Positions 4,796 to 64,000 of a stretch of 64,000 nt of DNA are shown here, one piece after another (the stretch's first letter is position 1; every line of letters starts with the position of its first letter). A program made the translations under genes and the position numbers. The stretch is taken from assembly GCF_902459465.1 (NCBI RefSeq), contig NC_047078.1, positions 12,648,001 to 12,712,000 on the forward strand. Direction: 5' to 3'. This DNA is from Asterias rubens (taxonomy: Eukaryota). The notes under the pieces are model-generated. The model was not told the DNA's origin. It was given only the letters and a program-made list of their open reading frames with translations, and did no database searches.

Positions 4796-5438
4796 TTTTC
4801 CCCCATCCCTTACCATGGGCTTATCGTGTACACTGCTCAGTAAAAACTGCCATTCTCTTGGAATAGTAAAACAAAACTCCACTTCTTATCAAAAGAGTTA
4901 CTAAAACTGAGCATCTTTTGAAAAGGCAGCCTGTTGAAAAACACAACCGACTCTGGGGGGAGTCTGAGCATGCTATCATGCATCTACTAACTTGTAGTTG
5001 TAATTGTTACCCTGCCCCCTGGCTTGACCTTGGTTTTCAATGGATTATTGTAATGAAATATAAAAAACACGGTTCACTCAAATGTGTAGTAGAGCTAGAG
5101 GGTAAGGAGTATTATTTAAGCTTGCAAAAGCCACCACAAAAGTAAACTACACAACCACTCCATGACACGGCCATTCCAATTTCACCCCAAATACAACCGG
5201 TACCAGACTAATTACGTTAAAGCGCTATGGTGAAACGGTATGCACTCAACCAATTTCACGATCGATATGAACCCGAACTGAAGCAACGACCGGCAAACAT
5301 AATTTACACCATTAAAATCAATCATACATTCGACAAAATATATATGTTCTTCAAGGGTATAACATTCTCTTTAAGAAAACGGGTAAAAAAACAGAGCAAA
5401 ATGTTTATTTTTTTGAGAAATTCGTGAAAATTCCTTAC

Positions 5439-59355: not shown

Positions 59356-62300
59356 ATGGCACAGCCTCCGCCTTACAATGCACAGGGCAAACCACCCCAA
59401 CAACCAGGCTACCCACCACAGCAAGCCGGCTACCCACCCCAACAACCAGGCTACCCACCCCCAGTTTATGGCAATCAGGCACCAGTGACCAATGTTCAAG
59501 TTCAACACACAGTAAGTACAACAATGTATTTGTCAGTGTTTGAACCCATAAAGCAGTAGGACATCAGACTTTCTATCCATGTGTAAGCCACACCCAAACC
59601 CATGAGTGTGAACACAAATTATCTCTGACTCCAGAATGGGTATTTGGTCTTGATTGGTATTAAATAAACTCCCTGTGTTAGGCAGGGCTATGTTTAGCCT
59701 GAACATCTGACGTCACACTTCAAGGCTAGTGAATAATGCCACAGATGGCCTCCAGGGCCCAATTTCATGGCTCTGCTTACCGCCGAATGCTGCACTTACG
59801 ATCTCGATCCCCGCTTACATGCAAGCGCCGAATTTCTGCACTACCCTCGTAAGCTTTACAATGCATAGTAACGAGGACTACGCATGCGTAGAAGCCAAAA
59901 TTTTGCCGCTAGCCCATGAAATACGCTTTCCGAAAAATAGGTTTGCCGGAAGCACAGAATTCCCTGCTTCCATAGGTGCAGATTCTGTGCTTACGGTATT
60001 AAGCAGAGCCATGAAAGTGGGCCCTTTTAGGTCAATCCCATCAATATTGACCTTTCACCTAGATTCATATGCAAGTGCAGCTGCTAAACGTCACATAGGA
60101 CCAATCAAACACAGCTATGGAAAGCTTAAAAGCTAATGTCACTGCACCTGTATCTAATGAAATCATTGTAGCCAATGAGATCACTGGTTCTGAAAAGCAA
60201 GTACAGTGTACCTGGCTTTATCATTGCGGATAAAGACAGGGGACCAGTCTAGGATATGCTATGATTAACTTTGACATATTATGTGATTTTAACACCCCTT
60301 ACAGAATCTTATTATTGTAAACTATTTTCTACTTTGTACAGAATGTTGTTGTTCAGCAAAACAGAACCAGCGGGTTGGAGGTAAGTTGATAAAAGAATTC
60401 TAACCTGTTGTAATCAGTCAATATGCCACATCTTGCTCATAAATTAATCACAGCCTGAGGTTTTATCCATGAAGTTTATACATTAAATTTTAAACATGCT
60501 TATCAATCATTATTATACATTTGAGCGCTGTGCAACCTTAGGAAAAGGCACTGTATAAATGGTGTTATAATTATTGTATTTTTATTATTGCTGCAATAAA
60601 CTATTGTGGTTTTTATGGTCTTCAAATGAATTTTGATAGGAATTGAATGAGCTATCAGATCAAAATAATCAATTGTTCTAATAATTACCAACCTGTACTT
60701 TTCCTCTGAGTTTTTCAACAAATATTCACGAACCGGCTTTAAGAAAACTTATTCATTACTAGTATTATAATTTTTGTGTCTGATAATCTGTATTACTATA
60801 ACATGAATCTTCTGTAAAAGAAAAGTAGATTATAATTTTGGTGCTTTCCCAAGCTCTGTCAACAAATCAGTGCTAAGACACATCAGTGTAAGGGTAAAAT
60901 CAAAATTAATATTCTTTATTCCTAATGCAAATGCAATAACTGTTAGAAAATTTGATATTATTTTGTTTCCTTGTGTCAGAGATCTTTGGGGAGTCTTTTC
61001 AAATCTGCTGAAAAGGTTGTAAATAATGCCAGCAACACACTTGTTCGTGAATCAGATCGTTATGCGAACTCCCCAACATTGGTAAGTAAAGAGTAACTTG
61101 TGCAGGATTGGTAGCAGTATTAACCTGTATCCTGAATTCTGGGCTAAATTTCATGCCTCTGCTTACCGCCGAATTAGTTTACGATCACCATTCTCCGCTT
61201 ACATGCAAGCACCGAGTTTCTGCACAAGCCTTGTAAGCATAGAATGCCTAGTAACAGGGAGTACGCATGCGCACATGCCGAAATTCCCTGCTAACCCGTG
61301 AAATGCGCTTGACGTAAGCACAGAATTCCCTGCTTCCGCAAGTGCCGATTCTTGGTTTACGGTAGGCAGAGTCATACAATTGGGCCCAGATGTCATCACT
61401 GAGGCCAGATACCAGCCATCCGAACCAACAGTCTATTGCTGTTGCCTATTCTTTGGTGATGTCAGAATAGGTGGCTACAGCTATGGCTACAGCTGGATCA
61501 CCGCATCATCATGCATTGAAGTATAGGACATCCTAAGAAACCCCCTTAGTAACAATCAAAGTCATAACCATAGCCATTAATTCAGATACAGCCCTAACAG
61601 GGGACCAGTCTATTCATAAACTTTTCTTATATCAACATTCCTTTAGTGACACTACAGCCAACTAAACTTCTCTATCAGTTTGGTTTGTAAGATTTTCTGC
61701 TAAATTGGCAAGTTTATTTCATCAACTAACATTCTCCATTACAACTCTCATTCAACGTCAGATATTGTATTAATAATAGTTATTGTTTCTTGTAGAATTT
61801 ATTCAGTAATGGTAACATTTTGAGACTTCAAGCCAGATCCAATGGAGGATATCTGCAAATCCTTCCTACTGGGGCATTGGATGCCAAAGGCTCTCCAAAT
61901 GACTTAGCAGGTAATAATGGTCAAGTTGGGCATAGAGCTTCAAGATCACACCCAAATTGTTCAAGCTGATAAATAGATAAGTAGGCACAAAAAAGTAGAA
62001 GCGTATTTTACAGCTTAGCAAGAAAAATTAGGCTTTTTTTTACGCTATTCATTTTCATACAGTAAGCACTGGAAGGTAAGCATGCCTTTTTGCATGCTTG
62101 CTGTTAGTGTTAGCAGCATTAAGAAATGGAAACTCATTAAGCACCTCTCCCGAGAAGGTTTTTTGTAAGAGAGCAATGAATGCTTGATTCTGTGAAGAAC
62201 ATTAGATGTCTTGAATGACAGCTACGTACCTTGATAGGAATGAAGAGAATACTGAAGGTTAAATGCGCCGTATTTTTGACAGTGTGAGAGCGTTTTCAAA

Positions 62301-64000
62301 CATATTTGTATCATTTCCGGGGTATATTCATTCGTACCCAAAACAGTTAAAGACTGGAACACATTTACCACCACAGATATCATATTCATCAGGGACAATG
62401 AGACTTTTAAAGGAGCCGTTATAATCCACCTCTAAGGCAACTTAACAACAAAAATGACAGAACGCCGATACAAACTGTGTAGGACGAATCGCGTATACCC
62501 CCGGGAGTGATACATACTATTGAGAGCGCCCTCACGCCGTCAAAATTACGGTGCATTACATCAAACCTAAAGACTAAAAGATTGCTTATTATTTAAGTTC
62601 AATCTGAAATCTCACTGAGGATAAAGTTCACACTAGTACTGATCTGCTAGAGATATATTTCTTTAAAAATACTTTTAAAAGTGAGGAAATACTGTCTTAA
62701 AAAGCAGAACAGTTCTATGAACTGAGAAGTCTCTTGAACATCCGATAAATCTACTCTGCGGTAGTAGAATAAAGCAAGACAGTTCTCTAAGAACAAACTC
62801 TACCTGGCAAGTAGATACACACATGGCGTTACCAAATTTATATTGATACCTCACCATGCAAAGCCTCAAATCCTAAATACTGTCTTAAGATTAGTAAGTT
62901 TAAGGAGTAAAACTTCCAGTGGTACTCACACATTGTTTTCATGTTGTTTCTCCATTCTAGCTCACTTTGTGGTAGTGAACATTGGTTTCAACCAGATCAT
63001 TCTCAAAAGTGCTATATATCCTACATGTCATATTGGCAACCATGGCGGCCACATTGTGGGAAATGTAAGCTGATTTGTTTGTAGTAATTAATACAAAGAG
63101 AATATTCATTTTGATTTTTTACCCATACACCGATGTGTGTTAGCACTGTATACTCGGTACTTTCACGAGTCCTGTGAAAAAATATCACAGGCATGTTACT
63201 CCGGTGGGATTCGAACCCACGACCCTTGCAATTCTAGAGCAGTGTCTTACCAACTAGACTACCGAGGTTGCCTGGTAGCTAGAGGCAGTTCAAATCCTAT
63301 ATTTGGCAGCGGGTACCGCAGCGATATAAATAGAAAGAGAGATATAATGGATGTTATCGGGGATAAAGAATACTCATTTGGGTTTATCCCATATGCACTG
63401 ATGTGTGTTAGCACTGTATGCTTGATACTTTCCCAAGTTCTGTGAACAAATATCACAGTGAAAGAGAAGATATCACTGGAGGGCAGCTGTGCAGACCTTA
63501 TTATTGTATAGCTGCAATTGTTATTCGTCATAACTTTTAATAAGTGGAATACAACCAACCAACCAAATACAACCAACCAAATAGCTTGGCAACTCTGCTT
63601 TGCTGCAGACGTAAAAAAGTTTTTACCCCATAAAATGGCCGACCATGTTATAGCAAAGTTAAAGGAAAACCACGCAAATTTCTAGGCTTGTTTGTATGGA
63701 TCATTATATTCTACTTTTAAAACATCTTTCTAACCATGCATAATCCAAAAAATGAACTTATACACCGATTTAAGTGGCTGGAAACTTTGAAGGCTTTGGA
63801 CTCTGATACATAACTTGTTTGATTTCTAAATCCAGGGTAACGGTGATCACTCATGTAAGTTTCGTCTGCATGAAACCATGCAAGGTTTCATCACGTTTGA
63901 ATCCGTGAACCCTGTAGATCAGCACATTGGAGTAAATGCAGATGGGAGTATGAAACCTGCTAACGTTGTACGCAAGGATATTTCAGCTATGTTTGGCCCA
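59356..64000 (+). CDS. Pro/Gln/Gly/Tyr-rich N-terminus plus FGF-like beta-trefoil domain protein (runs off the window end)
   Basis: Exons 59356-59511, 60342-60380, 60980-61081, 61796-61910, 62961-63064 and 63836-64000+ have canonical splice sites and compatible phases (0,0,0,1,0). Core: LRLQARSNGGYLQILPTGALDAKG / AHFVVVNIGFNQIILKS...GHIVGN / GNGDHSCKF...FESV...HIGVNADGSMKP...AMFGP. Confidence 0.85.
62335..62430 (+). mobile_element. Short LINE 3' remnant inside a palindromic MITE (about 62260-62560)
   Basis: SFVPKTVKDWNTF...TFKGAV..HL* resembles the CR1/L2-type C-terminal motif. Confidence 0.45.
63103..63460 (-). mobile_element. tRNA-centred element, about 1.3 units (268-bp period), with 8-bp TSD
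   Basis: Intact A-box TAGTCTAGTTGG and B-box GGTTCGAATCC (63207-63217); GATGTGTGTTAGCAC at 63132 and 63400; AAAGAGAA at 63095-63102 and 63461-63468. Confidence 0.75.

What the first reader, a model, noticed from the sequence alone, without database searches (positions are those of the whole stretch)
59356..64000. Divergent FGF-like beta-trefoil gene with FGF-type exon structure and no signal peptide
Seen: splicing six exons gives a core that aligns by eye with FGF1/2. SNGGYLQILPTGALDA matches SNGGHFLRILPDGTVDG, ILKS matches YIKS, GHIVGN|GNGDHSCKF matches GLLYGS|QTPNEECLF (including the conserved Cys), and HIGVNADGSMKP..AMFGP matches FVGLKKNGSCK..ILFLP. The middle core exon (62961-63064) is exactly 104 nt with phase 1 at its start and phase 0 at its end. 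Established: canonical FGF1/FGF2 have this 104-nt, phase 1/0 middle exon. Inference: this is a deep-branching, probably intracellular or unconventionally secreted FGF-superfamily member. It may instead be a stand-alone version of the FGF-like trefoil annotated in RP1/PLAT-type proteins. The ORF track misses it almost entirely.
Basis: partly seen in the sequence, partly recalled or inferred. Interest (0 to 1): 0.82.

Follow-up and report, generated by a model that had tools for sequence, protein, structure and literature searches.

The report
Signal-peptide-less FGF-fold gene, conserved across bilaterians
This is a real, expressed starfish gene for a protein with a fibroblast-growth-factor-type fold but no secretion signal. 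It belongs to an unnamed family shared by echinoderms, acorn worms, amphioxus, molluscs, annelids and probably brachiopods, and keeps the two hallmark FGF introns, so FGF-fold proteins without a secretion signal appear to be older than published FGF surveys assume.

Summary
Six GT-AG exons in the window splice into one open frame. The gene runs on: exon 6 ends 9 nt past the window, and a seventh exon 1.5 kb downstream carries the stop, giving 253 aa. Spliced transcript contigs from four public runs join exons 3 to 7 at these sites.

The core is an FGF-type beta-trefoil:
- Pfam FGF scores above its cut-off for the 89%-identical Asterias amurensis orthologue.
- An AlphaFold model matches only FGFs at the top of every structure search (Z 18.6-21.5, rmsd 1.3 A).
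- The 104-nt, phase 1/0 middle exon covers the same FGF profile positions (33-67) as the middle exon of canonical FGF genes in this genome.

The same seven-exon, same-phase structure is present in amphioxus, a hemichordate and an abalone, so the family dates to the bilaterian ancestor. Every source calls its members "uncharacterized", and the FGF surveys I read do not include it.

It differs from growth-factor FGFs. It has no signal peptide, fails the FGF signature motif, has replaced the receptor- and heparin-contact positions, has near-neutral charge, and carries a conserved PPxY-rich disordered N-terminus.

Most likely it is an intracellular FGF-fold adaptor. That function is inferred, not shown.

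The parts
59356..59511 (+). Coding exon 1 (156 nt, phase 0 to 0). It holds the start codon, which sits directly after an AG acceptor, and the Pro/Gln/Tyr-rich disordered N-terminus with two PPxY motifs.
   Evidence: Splice and frame check. The N-terminal start MAQPPPY is shared with orthologues from starfish to gastropods. PPxY is enriched over composition-matched shuffles.
60342..60380 (+). Coding exon 2 (39 nt, phase 0 to 0), a Val/Gln-rich linker.
   Evidence: Canonical AG/GT sites. A 39-60 nt exon sits at the same place in amphioxus, a hemichordate and an abalone. It is collinear with orthologue P0001.
60980..61081 (+). Coding exon 3 (102 nt, phase 0 to 0). It encodes the predicted helix and the conserved D..S..L segment that leads into the trefoil.
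   Evidence: Transcript contigs lie on it and join it to exon 4 (table 8). A helix is predicted at residues 62-80 of the orthologue model. Conserved columns are listed.
61796..61910 (+). Coding exon 4 (115 nt, phase 0 to 1), the first third of the FGF-type trefoil (FGF profile positions about 4-32). It ends at the FGF core intron ici1.
   Evidence: The Pfam match of the orthologue maps residue 95 to profile position 4, with no net indel up to residue 150 at position 59.
62961..63064 (+). Coding exon 5 (104 nt, phase 1 to 0), the middle third of the trefoil (FGF profile 33-67). It is the hallmark FGF middle exon.
   Evidence: Canonical FGF genes of the same genome have middle exons of 104, 104 and 107 nt, phase 1 to 0, matching profile 33-67. 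The exon is 104 nt in amphioxus and hemichordate family members and 101 nt in abalone. Transcript contigs cover it.
63836..64000 (+). Coding exon 6, the last third of the trefoil (FGF profile 68-120). It is cut by the window end. The true exon is 174 nt and ends at window-equivalent 64009. Exon 7 (72 nt including the stop) lies at window-equivalent 65499-65570, followed by a 3' UTR; the transcript contigs run about 1 kb beyond the stretch laid.
   Evidence: This exon alone hits Pfam FGF positions 71-117 (E 0.0099). The extension and exon 7 come from L004. Contigs join 4836-5008 to 6498 onward in L004 coordinates.

Best explanation
SHOWN. The stretch is the first six of seven coding exons of an expressed, single-copy gene. 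The organism is a starfish very close to Asterias amurensis, probably Asterias rubens. The gene encodes a 253-aa protein in four parts:
- a disordered Pro/Gln/Tyr-rich N-terminus with conserved PPxY motifs;
- a short helix;
- a confidently predicted FGF-type beta-trefoil;
- a short Thr/Val-rich tail ending in Lys.

The trefoil shares ancestry with FGF growth factors. It keeps both FGF core introns (ici1, ici2) at the same profile positions and phases, including the 104-nt middle exon. The gene belongs to an unnamed family inherited vertically since the bilaterian ancestor. I found members in echinoderms, hemichordates, amphioxus, gastropods, a bivalve and annelids, plus a probable brachiopod member.

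INFERRED. The protein stays in the cytosol. The trefoil acts as a protein-binding module, as in the intracellular FGF homologous factors. The N-terminal PPxY motifs recruit WW-domain proteins such as Nedd4-type ubiquitin ligases, linking the bound partner to ubiquitination or vesicle sorting. It is not a classical heparin-dependent ligand of FGF receptors.
For: Gene and RNA:
- Open spliced frame with GT-AG sites.
- Contigs from four runs join exons 3 to 7.
- Of the coding differences from the sister species that read laying listed, 9 changed codons are synonymous and 5 are not.

FGF ancestry:
- Pfam FGF scores 28.2-32.9 bits (cut-off 24) in P0001, P0002 and P0007, covering 4-120 of 124 profile positions.
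- FGF is the commonest Pfam family among the 27 members: 11 hits, best E 7e-8. The next are RicinB_lectin_2 (5 hits, best 0.012) and Fascin (2 hits, best 0.023).
- The trefoil is modelled at pLDDT above 90.
- The Foldseek PDB top 50 are FGFs and FGF-1-derived designed trefoils (Symfoil), with TM by target 0.75-0.90. The Swiss-Prot AlphaFold top 30 are all FGFs.
- In VIA-align, the nine best hits are FGFs at Z 18.6-21.5. The best other trefoil scores 18.2, and no IL-1 appears in the top 50.
- Intron positions match canonical FGFs of the same genome. A published survey treats ici1 and ici2 as ancestral to all FGFs (PMC11733497). FGF5 exon 2 is 104 bp (PMC2754481).

Age and range:
- Seven exons with intron phases 0,0,0,1,0,0 occur in amphioxus, Glandiceps and Haliotis.
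- The family tree separates deuterostome from lophotrochozoan members (SH-aLRT 100).
- Taxa are listed. The best AlphaFold-cluster hit is a further full-length member at 30% identity, which I take to be from the brachiopod Lingula on its accession style alone; the tool withheld the organism.

Not a classical ligand:
- No signal peptide in any member.
- Trefoil net charge is about +1, against +9 in a canonical starfish FGF.
- The recalled FGF signature pattern matches the canonical control but none of the roughly 40 family members.
- In the alignment to consensus FGF, the positions that I recall as FGF2 receptor contacts (Y24, E96, Y103, L140, M142) read Q, M, F, A (Gly in the window's own protein) and S. 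Most basic residues of the heparin loop are absent.

PPxY:
- 20 of 22 members with an N-terminal disordered region carry at least one PPxY, against 6.7 expected. In total there are 34 motifs against 8.6 expected.
Against: - No experiment or localisation data exist. Intracellular residence rests only on the missing signal peptide, and FGF1, FGF2 and IL-1 are exported without one.
- The PPxY-WW link is motif-based. The one complex prediction I ran gave no verdict.
- The shuffle test for PPxY ignores relatedness among members.
- Similarity to FGFs is weak by sequence: 14-24% identity, with the family profile matching natural FGFs in the PDB at E about 1e-3. Only 11 of 27 members hit Pfam FGF at all.
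- The structural margin over other trefoils is about 3 Z units.
- The window's own protein could not be scanned as one piece. The whole-protein tests used its 89%-identical orthologue.
Confidence: 0.6

Rival explanations
1. It is an unconventionally secreted growth factor. Like FGF1 and FGF2, it would leave the cell without a signal peptide and signal through the FGF receptor or another surface receptor. The PPxY motifs could load it into extracellular vesicles.
For: It has the FGF fold and FGF ancestry. FGFs that lack a signal peptide can still be exported and act as paracrine signals (PMC11733497). PPxY motifs are known vesicle-budding signals (general knowledge).
Against: The aligned receptor-contact positions and most heparin-loop basic residues are replaced. 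Which positions are contacts is my recollection. Trefoil net charge is about +1 against +9 in a canonical starfish FGF. The FGF signature pattern is not matched.
Confidence: 0.13
2. It is the counterpart outside tunicates and vertebrates (Olfactores), or the ancestor, of the intracellular FGF homologous factors (FGF11-14). Those factors bind the cytoplasmic tails of ion channels.
For: - Both lack a signal peptide.
- Both have extra introns flanking the core. The literature regards these as peculiar to FGF11-14 and absent from amphioxus and ambulacrarian FGFs (PMC11733497).
- The ranges are complementary. FHFs are reported only in tunicates and vertebrates, and this family was found only outside them.
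- FGF13 and FGF12 are among the best natural hits by profile and by structure.
Against: - FGF18 and FGF8 score the same as FGF13 and FGF12, so there is no specific affinity.
- The flanking introns here are both phase 0.
- FHFs have no PPxY-rich N-terminus.
Confidence: 0.12
3. The resemblance to FGFs is only a shared beta-trefoil fold. On this view the family belongs with another trefoil lineage: fascin-like, ricin or Euonymus-lectin-like cytoplasmic lectins, or the trefoil inside LOXHD1-type PLAT proteins.
For: - There are weak Pfam hits to RicinB_lectin_2 (5 members) and Fascin (2 members).
- A language-model search puts plant Pro-rich plus RicinB_lectin_2 proteins at 0.84.
- PLAT/LOXHD1 proteins are the top or near-top structural neighbours in two libraries.
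- The only other relative in this genome is an unclassified trefoil gene on contig 22.
Against: - FGF hits are 5 or more orders of magnitude better than any other Pfam family.
- FGFs have the best Z, rmsd and identity.
- Both core introns coincide with FGF ici1 and ici2 in position, phase and 104-nt spacing. By my rough estimate this is improbable by chance (order 1e-4).
- The trefoil has no tryptophan and no QxW motif.
- The LOXHD1 cluster is itself recognised by Pfam FGF in 62% of its members. Kinship with it would therefore still be FGF-superfamily kinship.
Confidence: 0.07

Closest known systems
Canonical secreted FGFs (for example FGF8/17/18 and FGF9/16/20; Pfam PF00167)
   Same: - The 12-strand FGF-type trefoil (Z up to 21.5, rmsd 1.3 A over 125 residues).
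- A Pfam FGF match over nearly the whole profile.
- Both core introns, with the 104-nt phase 1/0 middle exon, exactly as in three canonical FGF genes of this genome.
- The conserved Cys in some members.
   Different: - No signal peptide.
- Seven coding exons; the one canonical FGF of this genome that I fully spliced has three.
- A PPxY-rich disordered N-terminus and a conserved tail.
- The FGF signature pattern is not matched.
- Receptor and heparin contact positions are replaced.
- Near-neutral charge.
- Only 14-24% identity.
FGF homologous factors (FGF11-14, intracellular FGFs)
   Same: An FGF fold without a signal peptide. They are presumed to have an intracellular, non-receptor role. Their genes have introns flanking the core in addition to ici1 and ici2. 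They are among the best natural matches.
   Different: FHFs are reported only in tunicates and vertebrates (PMC11733497), and this family was found only outside them. The flanking-intron phases appear to differ (recollection, untested). The N- and C-terminal extensions are different. Channel-binding residues were not examined.
FGF-like trefoil inside LOXHD1-type PLAT-domain proteins
   Same: A cytoplasmic protein carrying a trefoil that Pfam calls FGF in 62% of cluster members. It is as close in structure as canonical FGFs (TM 0.54, rmsd 1.9 A over 137 residues; E 7e-12).
   Different: That trefoil is embedded among PLAT repeats in a large protein, whereas here it stands alone with a PPxY tail. 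No sequence-level link was found, and the family profile finds no such gene in this genome. Intron positions were not compared.
IL-1 and 'IL-1anc' cytokines (PMC13736523)
   Same: A beta-trefoil without a signal peptide, found across invertebrates, with an (F/L)ES-type motif in the third trefoil unit.
   Different: [quoted passage not shown]
- Here there is no PDZ domain.
- No Pfam IL1 hit was found; one member gives a marginal IL33_bt hit at E 0.067.
- No IL-1 chain appears among the 33 and 29 PDB sequence hits.
- No IL-1 structure appears in the top 50 structural matches.

Membership tests
FGF family (Pfam PF00167) | Match to the FGF profile above Pfam's gathering cut-off (24 bits) | tested here: met
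   The 89%-identical orthologue P0001 scores 28.2 bits over profile positions 4-120 of 124. P0002 and P0007 score 32.9 bits. The window's exon 6 alone scores 16.3 bits. Caveats: only 11 of 27 family members hit at E<=1, and the window's own spliced protein could not be submitted whole.
FGF family (Pfam PF00167) | FGF-type beta-trefoil fold | tested here: met
   The model has pLDDT above 90 over residues about 81-220. Top hits are FGF18 (Z 21.5, rmsd 1.3 A, 125 aligned), FGF10, FGF12, FGF8, FGF4, FGF13, FGF20 and FGF9. The Foldseek top 50 (FGFs and FGF-1-derived designs) and the Swiss-Prot top 30 (all FGFs) agree.
FGF family (Pfam PF00167) | Two conserved core introns (ici1 phase 1, ici2 phase 0) bounding a middle exon of about 104 nt | tested here: met
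   Exon 5 is 104 nt, phase 1 to 0. It maps to profile positions 33-67, the same as the canonical FGF middle exons of 104, 104 and 107 nt in this genome. It is conserved in three other phyla. Literature: PMC11733497 and PMC2754481.
FGF family (Pfam PF00167) | FGF signature motif (PROSITE-type pattern around the conserved Cys, as I recall it) | tested here: not met
   The regex matches the canonical starfish FGF used as a control. It matches none of the roughly 40 family proteins, including the window's own. Three of the specified positions differ. The pattern was written from memory.
FGF family (Pfam PF00167) | Receptor-contact and heparin-binding residues | tested here: inconclusive
   In the HMMER alignment to consensus FGF, the positions I recall as FGF2 Y24, E96, Y103, L140 and M142 read Q, M, F, A (Gly in the window's own protein) and S. 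The basic loop has 3 basic residues where the consensus has 8. Net charge is +1 against +9.
FGF homologous factors (FGF11-14) | Core-flanking introns cfi1 and cfi2 at the FHF positions and phases | tested here: inconclusive
   Introns flank the core here, both phase 0, and are conserved in four phyla. From memory the FHF ones are phase 1.
FGF homologous factors (FGF11-14) | Specific sequence affinity to FHFs over other FGFs | tested here: not met
   Family profile against the PDB: FGF13 22.3 bits, FGF18 21.7, FGF12 21.5, FGF8 21.0. The Z-scores are likewise tied.
IL-1 / IL-1anc | IL-1-type trefoil (Pfam PF00340), usually with an N-terminal PDZ domain | tested here: not met
   There is no IL1 or PDZ hit in any member. 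One member has a marginal IL33_bt hit at E 0.067. No IL-1 chain appears in the PDB sequence or structure lists.
Ricin-type lectins | (QxW)3 repeats | tested here: not met
   The window's trefoil has no tryptophan and no QxW. The best RicinB_lectin_2 E-value in the family is 0.012.

The most novel reading that the evidence does not exclude
This family would be an unrecognised ancient FGF subfamily that works inside the cell. It would date to the bilaterian ancestor, be tied to WW-domain/Nedd4-type machinery through its PPxY tail, and have been lost in tunicates and vertebrates, where the intracellular FGF11-14 genes appear. It would then be either their ancestor or their functional forerunner. 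That would overturn the published view that intracellular FGFs are an innovation of tunicates plus vertebrates.
Probability: 0.15. Interest if true: 0.8.

Novelty: new variant of a known kind. Interest (0 to 1): 0.6.

Why it matters
Published FGF inventories for echinoderms, hemichordates, amphioxus and spiralians list only secreted-type FGFs. They state that signal-peptide-less intracellular FGFs arose in tunicates plus vertebrates (PMC3420111, PMC11733497, PMC8180254).

This gene shows something different. An FGF-derived trefoil without a secretion signal, with its own conserved seven-exon structure and PPxY-rich tail, was already present in the bilaterian ancestor and is still expressed in starfish.

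It offers a tractable case for asking what the FGF fold does when it is not a receptor ligand. Starfish and amphioxus embryos can be injected, so localisation and knock-down tests are feasible. It also gives a new outgroup or sister lineage for rooting FGF phylogenies.

The intron evidence is a useful template for telling true FGF relatives from look-alike trefoils.

Tried and rejected
- Complex prediction. I paired the exon 1 peptide (52 aa, two PPxY motifs) with the fourth WW domain of a WW x4 + HECT ligase gene of this genome (C4:14599262-14610411). Score 0.06 against a mark of 0.34, so no verdict either way.
- Single exons 1, 3, 4 and 5 give no Pfam hit on their own. The exon 4, exon 4+5 and exon 5 equivalents of P0001 likewise give none.
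- Mistake in the representative-library query. I ran it with exon 6 plus 5 intron-derived residues, having first mis-set the exon end at 64024 instead of 64009. The hits aligned only to the true exon, so the result stands.
- IL-1anc identity was considered because of the FES motif and the missing signal peptide. I rejected it: no PDZ domain, no IL-1 hits.
- Fascin identity of the contig-22 relative was not confirmed by Pfam.
- Literature searches for FHF exon sizes found nothing usable.
- No phylogeny with a full FGF set was built. Only one complete canonical FGF could be spliced from this genome, and it sits on a branch of 6.4 changes per site.
- The search of earlier findings gave only this same finding and unrelated notes.


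Full report
WHAT IS IN THE SEQUENCE

The exons are 59356-59511, 60342-60380, 60980-61081, 61796-61910, 62961-63064 and 63836 onward. Every exon is preceded by a polypyrimidine tract and AG. Exons 1-5 are followed by GTAAGT-like donors. My first splice was off by one base at the ATG and was corrected. Exon 5 is exactly 104 nt, entered in phase 1 and left in phase 0.

The window is G000:C18:12648001-12712000 in a 417.6-Mb genome. Fetching downstream DNA (L004) shows that exon 6 runs 9 nt past the window, to a GTAAGT donor at window-equivalent 64010. A seventh exon at L004 6499-6570 (window-equivalent 65499-65570) supplies 23 residues and the stop. The seven coding exons measure 156, 39, 102, 115, 104, 174 and 72 nt, and the protein is 253 aa.

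RNA SUPPORT

One call of read laying on L004:750-6749 used four runs whose word share (0.06-0.13) fits exons only. Each run holds a contig of 1.4-2.4 kb lying on exons 4, 6 and 7 (in three of the four runs also on exons 3 and 5, as listed) with the introns missing. The record coordinates are contiguous, and the shifts at the joints are 1-2 nt (table 8).

Two runs (organism A) match without a single difference. Two (organism B) differ at positions that reproduce the amino-acid differences of the Asterias amurensis orthologue. Among the listed coding differences, 9 changed codons are synonymous and 5 are not.

These two junctions rest on collinearity with orthologue proteins and on conserved gene structure.

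WHAT THE PROTEIN IS

A phmmer scan of 1.84 billion representatives with exon 6 found nine proteins. The best is P0001, "uncharacterized protein [Asterias amurensis]", 239 aa. It is 89% identical to the window's protein over the whole length, with one 14-residue indel in the Pro/Gln repeats.

Pfam FGF (PF00167) matches P0001 at 28.2 bits and two other members at 32.9 bits, against a cut-off of 24. The match covers profile positions 4-120 of 124. Across 27 members, FGF is the commonest family by far: 11 members, best E 7e-8. Next come RicinB_lectin_2 (5 members, best 0.012), Fascin (2, best 0.023) and IL33_bt (1, 0.067).

An AlphaFold2 model built on the 27-sequence alignment has pLDDT above 90 from about residue 81 to 220. 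Confidence is low in the N-terminal 80 residues and in the tail. The structure searches agree:
- Foldseek against the PDB returns FGFs and FGF-1-derived designed trefoils (Symfoil) in the top 50: consensus FGF, FGF12, 18, 1, 13, 2, 10, 8 and 9. TM by target is 0.75-0.90 and rmsd 1.3-3.1 A.
- The Swiss-Prot AlphaFold library returns only FGFs in the top 30.
- VIA-align against 48,161 representative chains puts nine FGFs first, at Z 18.6-21.5. Other trefoils follow from Z 18.2 (botulinum HA1, a mosquitocidal toxin, fascin). No IL-1 is in the top 50.

By sequence, the family profile finds FGF-1-derived Symfoil designs (1e-6), then FGF13, FGF18, FGF12 and FGF8 at about 1e-3. It finds no other natural trefoil family. 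The orthologue trefoil aligns to a consensus FGF at E 5e-5.

THE INTRON ARGUMENT

A six-frame Pfam FGF scan of this genome finds canonical FGF genes on contigs 8 and 10. Their middle exons match profile positions 33-67. Splicing them shows middle exons of 104, 104 and 107 nt, all phase 1 to 0. One of these genes has a clear signal peptide.

In the orthologue, residue 95 maps to profile position 4, residue 150 to position 59, and the first residue of exon 6 to position 68, with no net indel. Exon 5 therefore covers positions 33-67. Both introns coincide with the canonical ones in position, phase and spacing.

A recent survey calls these introns ici1 and ici2 and treats them as ancestral to all FGF genes (PMC11733497). 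FGF5 exon 2 is 104 bp in elephantids (PMC2754481). A rough estimate of chance coincidence of two introns at given positions and phases in a 130-codon domain, allowing some alignment slack, is of order 1e-4. That figure is my estimate, not a tool result. This is the strongest evidence for common descent with FGFs rather than fold convergence.

A CONSERVED, UNNAMED FAMILY

Searches with the family alignments found members in these groups:
- echinoderms: Asterias, two genes in Patiria, Amphiura, Apostichopus;
- hemichordates: Glandiceps, Saccoglossus;
- amphioxus;
- many gastropods;
- a bivalve: Mactra;
- annelids: Ridgeia, Lamellibrachia.

The best AlphaFold-cluster hit is a further full-length member at 30% identity. 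Its organism was not given. From the accession style I think it is the brachiopod Lingula.

Every name given by a source is "uncharacterized" or "hypothetical", apart from two evident mis-names. I found no member in vertebrates, tunicates, arthropods or cnidarians. The searches are word-limited, so absence is not shown.

Exact splice mapping of the amphioxus, Glandiceps and Haliotis proteins onto their loci gives seven coding exons in each. The intron phases are 0,0,0,1,0,0, and the middle exon is 104, 104 and 101 nt. A maximum-likelihood tree groups all deuterostome members (SH-aLRT 100) apart from molluscs and annelids. This is consistent with vertical descent. The one canonical FGF included sits on a very long branch.

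In this genome the gene is single-copy. The only other hit of the family profile is a weak one on contig 22.

HOW IT DIFFERS FROM GROWTH-FACTOR FGFS

- No member has a hydrophobic N-terminus.
- The FGF signature pattern, written from memory and validated on the canonical starfish FGF, matches no member.
- In the alignment, the positions I recall as the main FGF2 receptor contacts are replaced. The basic heparin-binding loop keeps 3 basic residues where the consensus has 8.
- Trefoil net charge is about +1 (median pI 8.3), against +9 (pI 9.8) for the canonical starfish FGF core.
- The N-terminus is disordered, Pro/Gln/Gly/Tyr-rich, and often starts MAQPPPY, from starfish to sea slugs.
- PPxY occurs in 20 of 22 members that have this region, against 6.7 expected from composition-preserving shuffles. 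In total there are 34 motifs against 8.6 expected. Relatedness inflates this contrast.
- The tail after the trefoil (…YP…V..V.K) is also conserved.

MECHANISM

What is shown: a real, expressed, conserved gene; FGF ancestry of the trefoil; no signal peptide; loss of the FGF signature.

What is inferred: the protein works in the cytosol. The trefoil binds a partner, as FGF11-14 do with channel tails. The PPxY motifs engage WW-domain proteins such as Nedd4-type ligases. I located such a ligase gene in this genome (WW x4 plus HECT on contig 4). The single complex prediction gave no verdict and is not evidence.

Export without a signal peptide, as for FGF1, FGF2 or IL-1, cannot be excluded.

RELATION TO KNOWN THINGS

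The family is not among the FGFs listed for the sea urchin, hemichordates, amphioxus or spiralians in the papers I read (PMC3420111; PMC11733497; PMC8180254).

Those papers hold that intracellular FGF11-14 arose in tunicates plus vertebrates, and that their two core-flanking introns are absent from amphioxus and ambulacrarian FGFs. This family is found in exactly those animals, lacks a signal peptide, and has introns flanking the core. A link to FGF11-14 is therefore worth testing. However, FGF13 and FGF12 do not score better than FGF18 and FGF8. By my unverified recollection of FHF exon sizes, the flanking introns also differ in phase.

The IL-1anc family recently described in invertebrates is different: it has a PDZ domain plus an IL-1 trefoil (PMC13736523).

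PLAT-domain proteins of the LOXHD1 type carry an FGF-like trefoil that is as close in structure as canonical FGFs.

VERDICT

The finding is a new, architecturally distinct branch of the FGF superfamily rather than a new kind of system. The function is unknown and is stated here as a reasoned hypothesis.

Noticed in passing
window 63195-63269 (- strand), flanked by 63099-63190 and 63367-63458: ARAGORN calls a tRNA-Ser(AGA) inside intron 5. It is bracketed by two 92-nt direct repeats that are 82% identical. It may be a tRNA gene carried by, or the head of, a tRNA-derived mobile element.
   Followed up: partly
window 63616-63741 (intron 5): A repeat of about 125 nt has at least 69 matches across the genome at 75-90% identity. 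Many lie as closely spaced pairs on opposite strands, which looks like a MITE-like element.
   Followed up: no
window 59808-59998 (intron 1) and 61192-61364 (intron 3): The two introns share pieces of one dispersed repeat (80-87% identity). Transcriptome contigs pile up on these stretches at very high depth (table 2). Depth over the introns therefore says nothing about this gene.
   Followed up: partly
G000:C22:3752924-3753100 (- strand) = L011 2924-3100: A 59-aa exon is about 28% identical to exon 6 (my hand count) and is likewise bounded by phase-0 introns. The preceding exon appears to encode the first two-thirds of a trefoil without the ici1 intron. Pfam does not name it. A language-model search puts it among AbfB, fascin and ricin trefoils. 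It is the only other relative in this genome.
   Followed up: partly
window 59398-59460 (exon 1): The window's protein has 14 more residues of the PGYPPQQ-type repeat than the Asterias amurensis orthologue. This is an in-frame repeat-number difference between sister species.
   Followed up: partly
P0002 and P0010 (Patiria miniata), same 28-Mb record: Patiria has two family members on one chromosome, whereas this genome has one. This points to a lineage-specific duplication.
   Followed up: no
P0012 (Apostichopus) and P0014 (Elysia marginata): Public names for two members look like mis-annotations: "AT-rich interactive domain-containing protein 1A-like" and "FHA domain-containing protein". They were probably triggered by the low-complexity N-terminus.
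   Followed up: no
G000:C4:14599262-14610411 (- strand), partly in L012: Four WW-domain exons are followed by HECT exons, which indicates a Nedd4-family ubiquitin ligase gene. I used it as the source of the WW domain for the complex test.
   Followed up: partly
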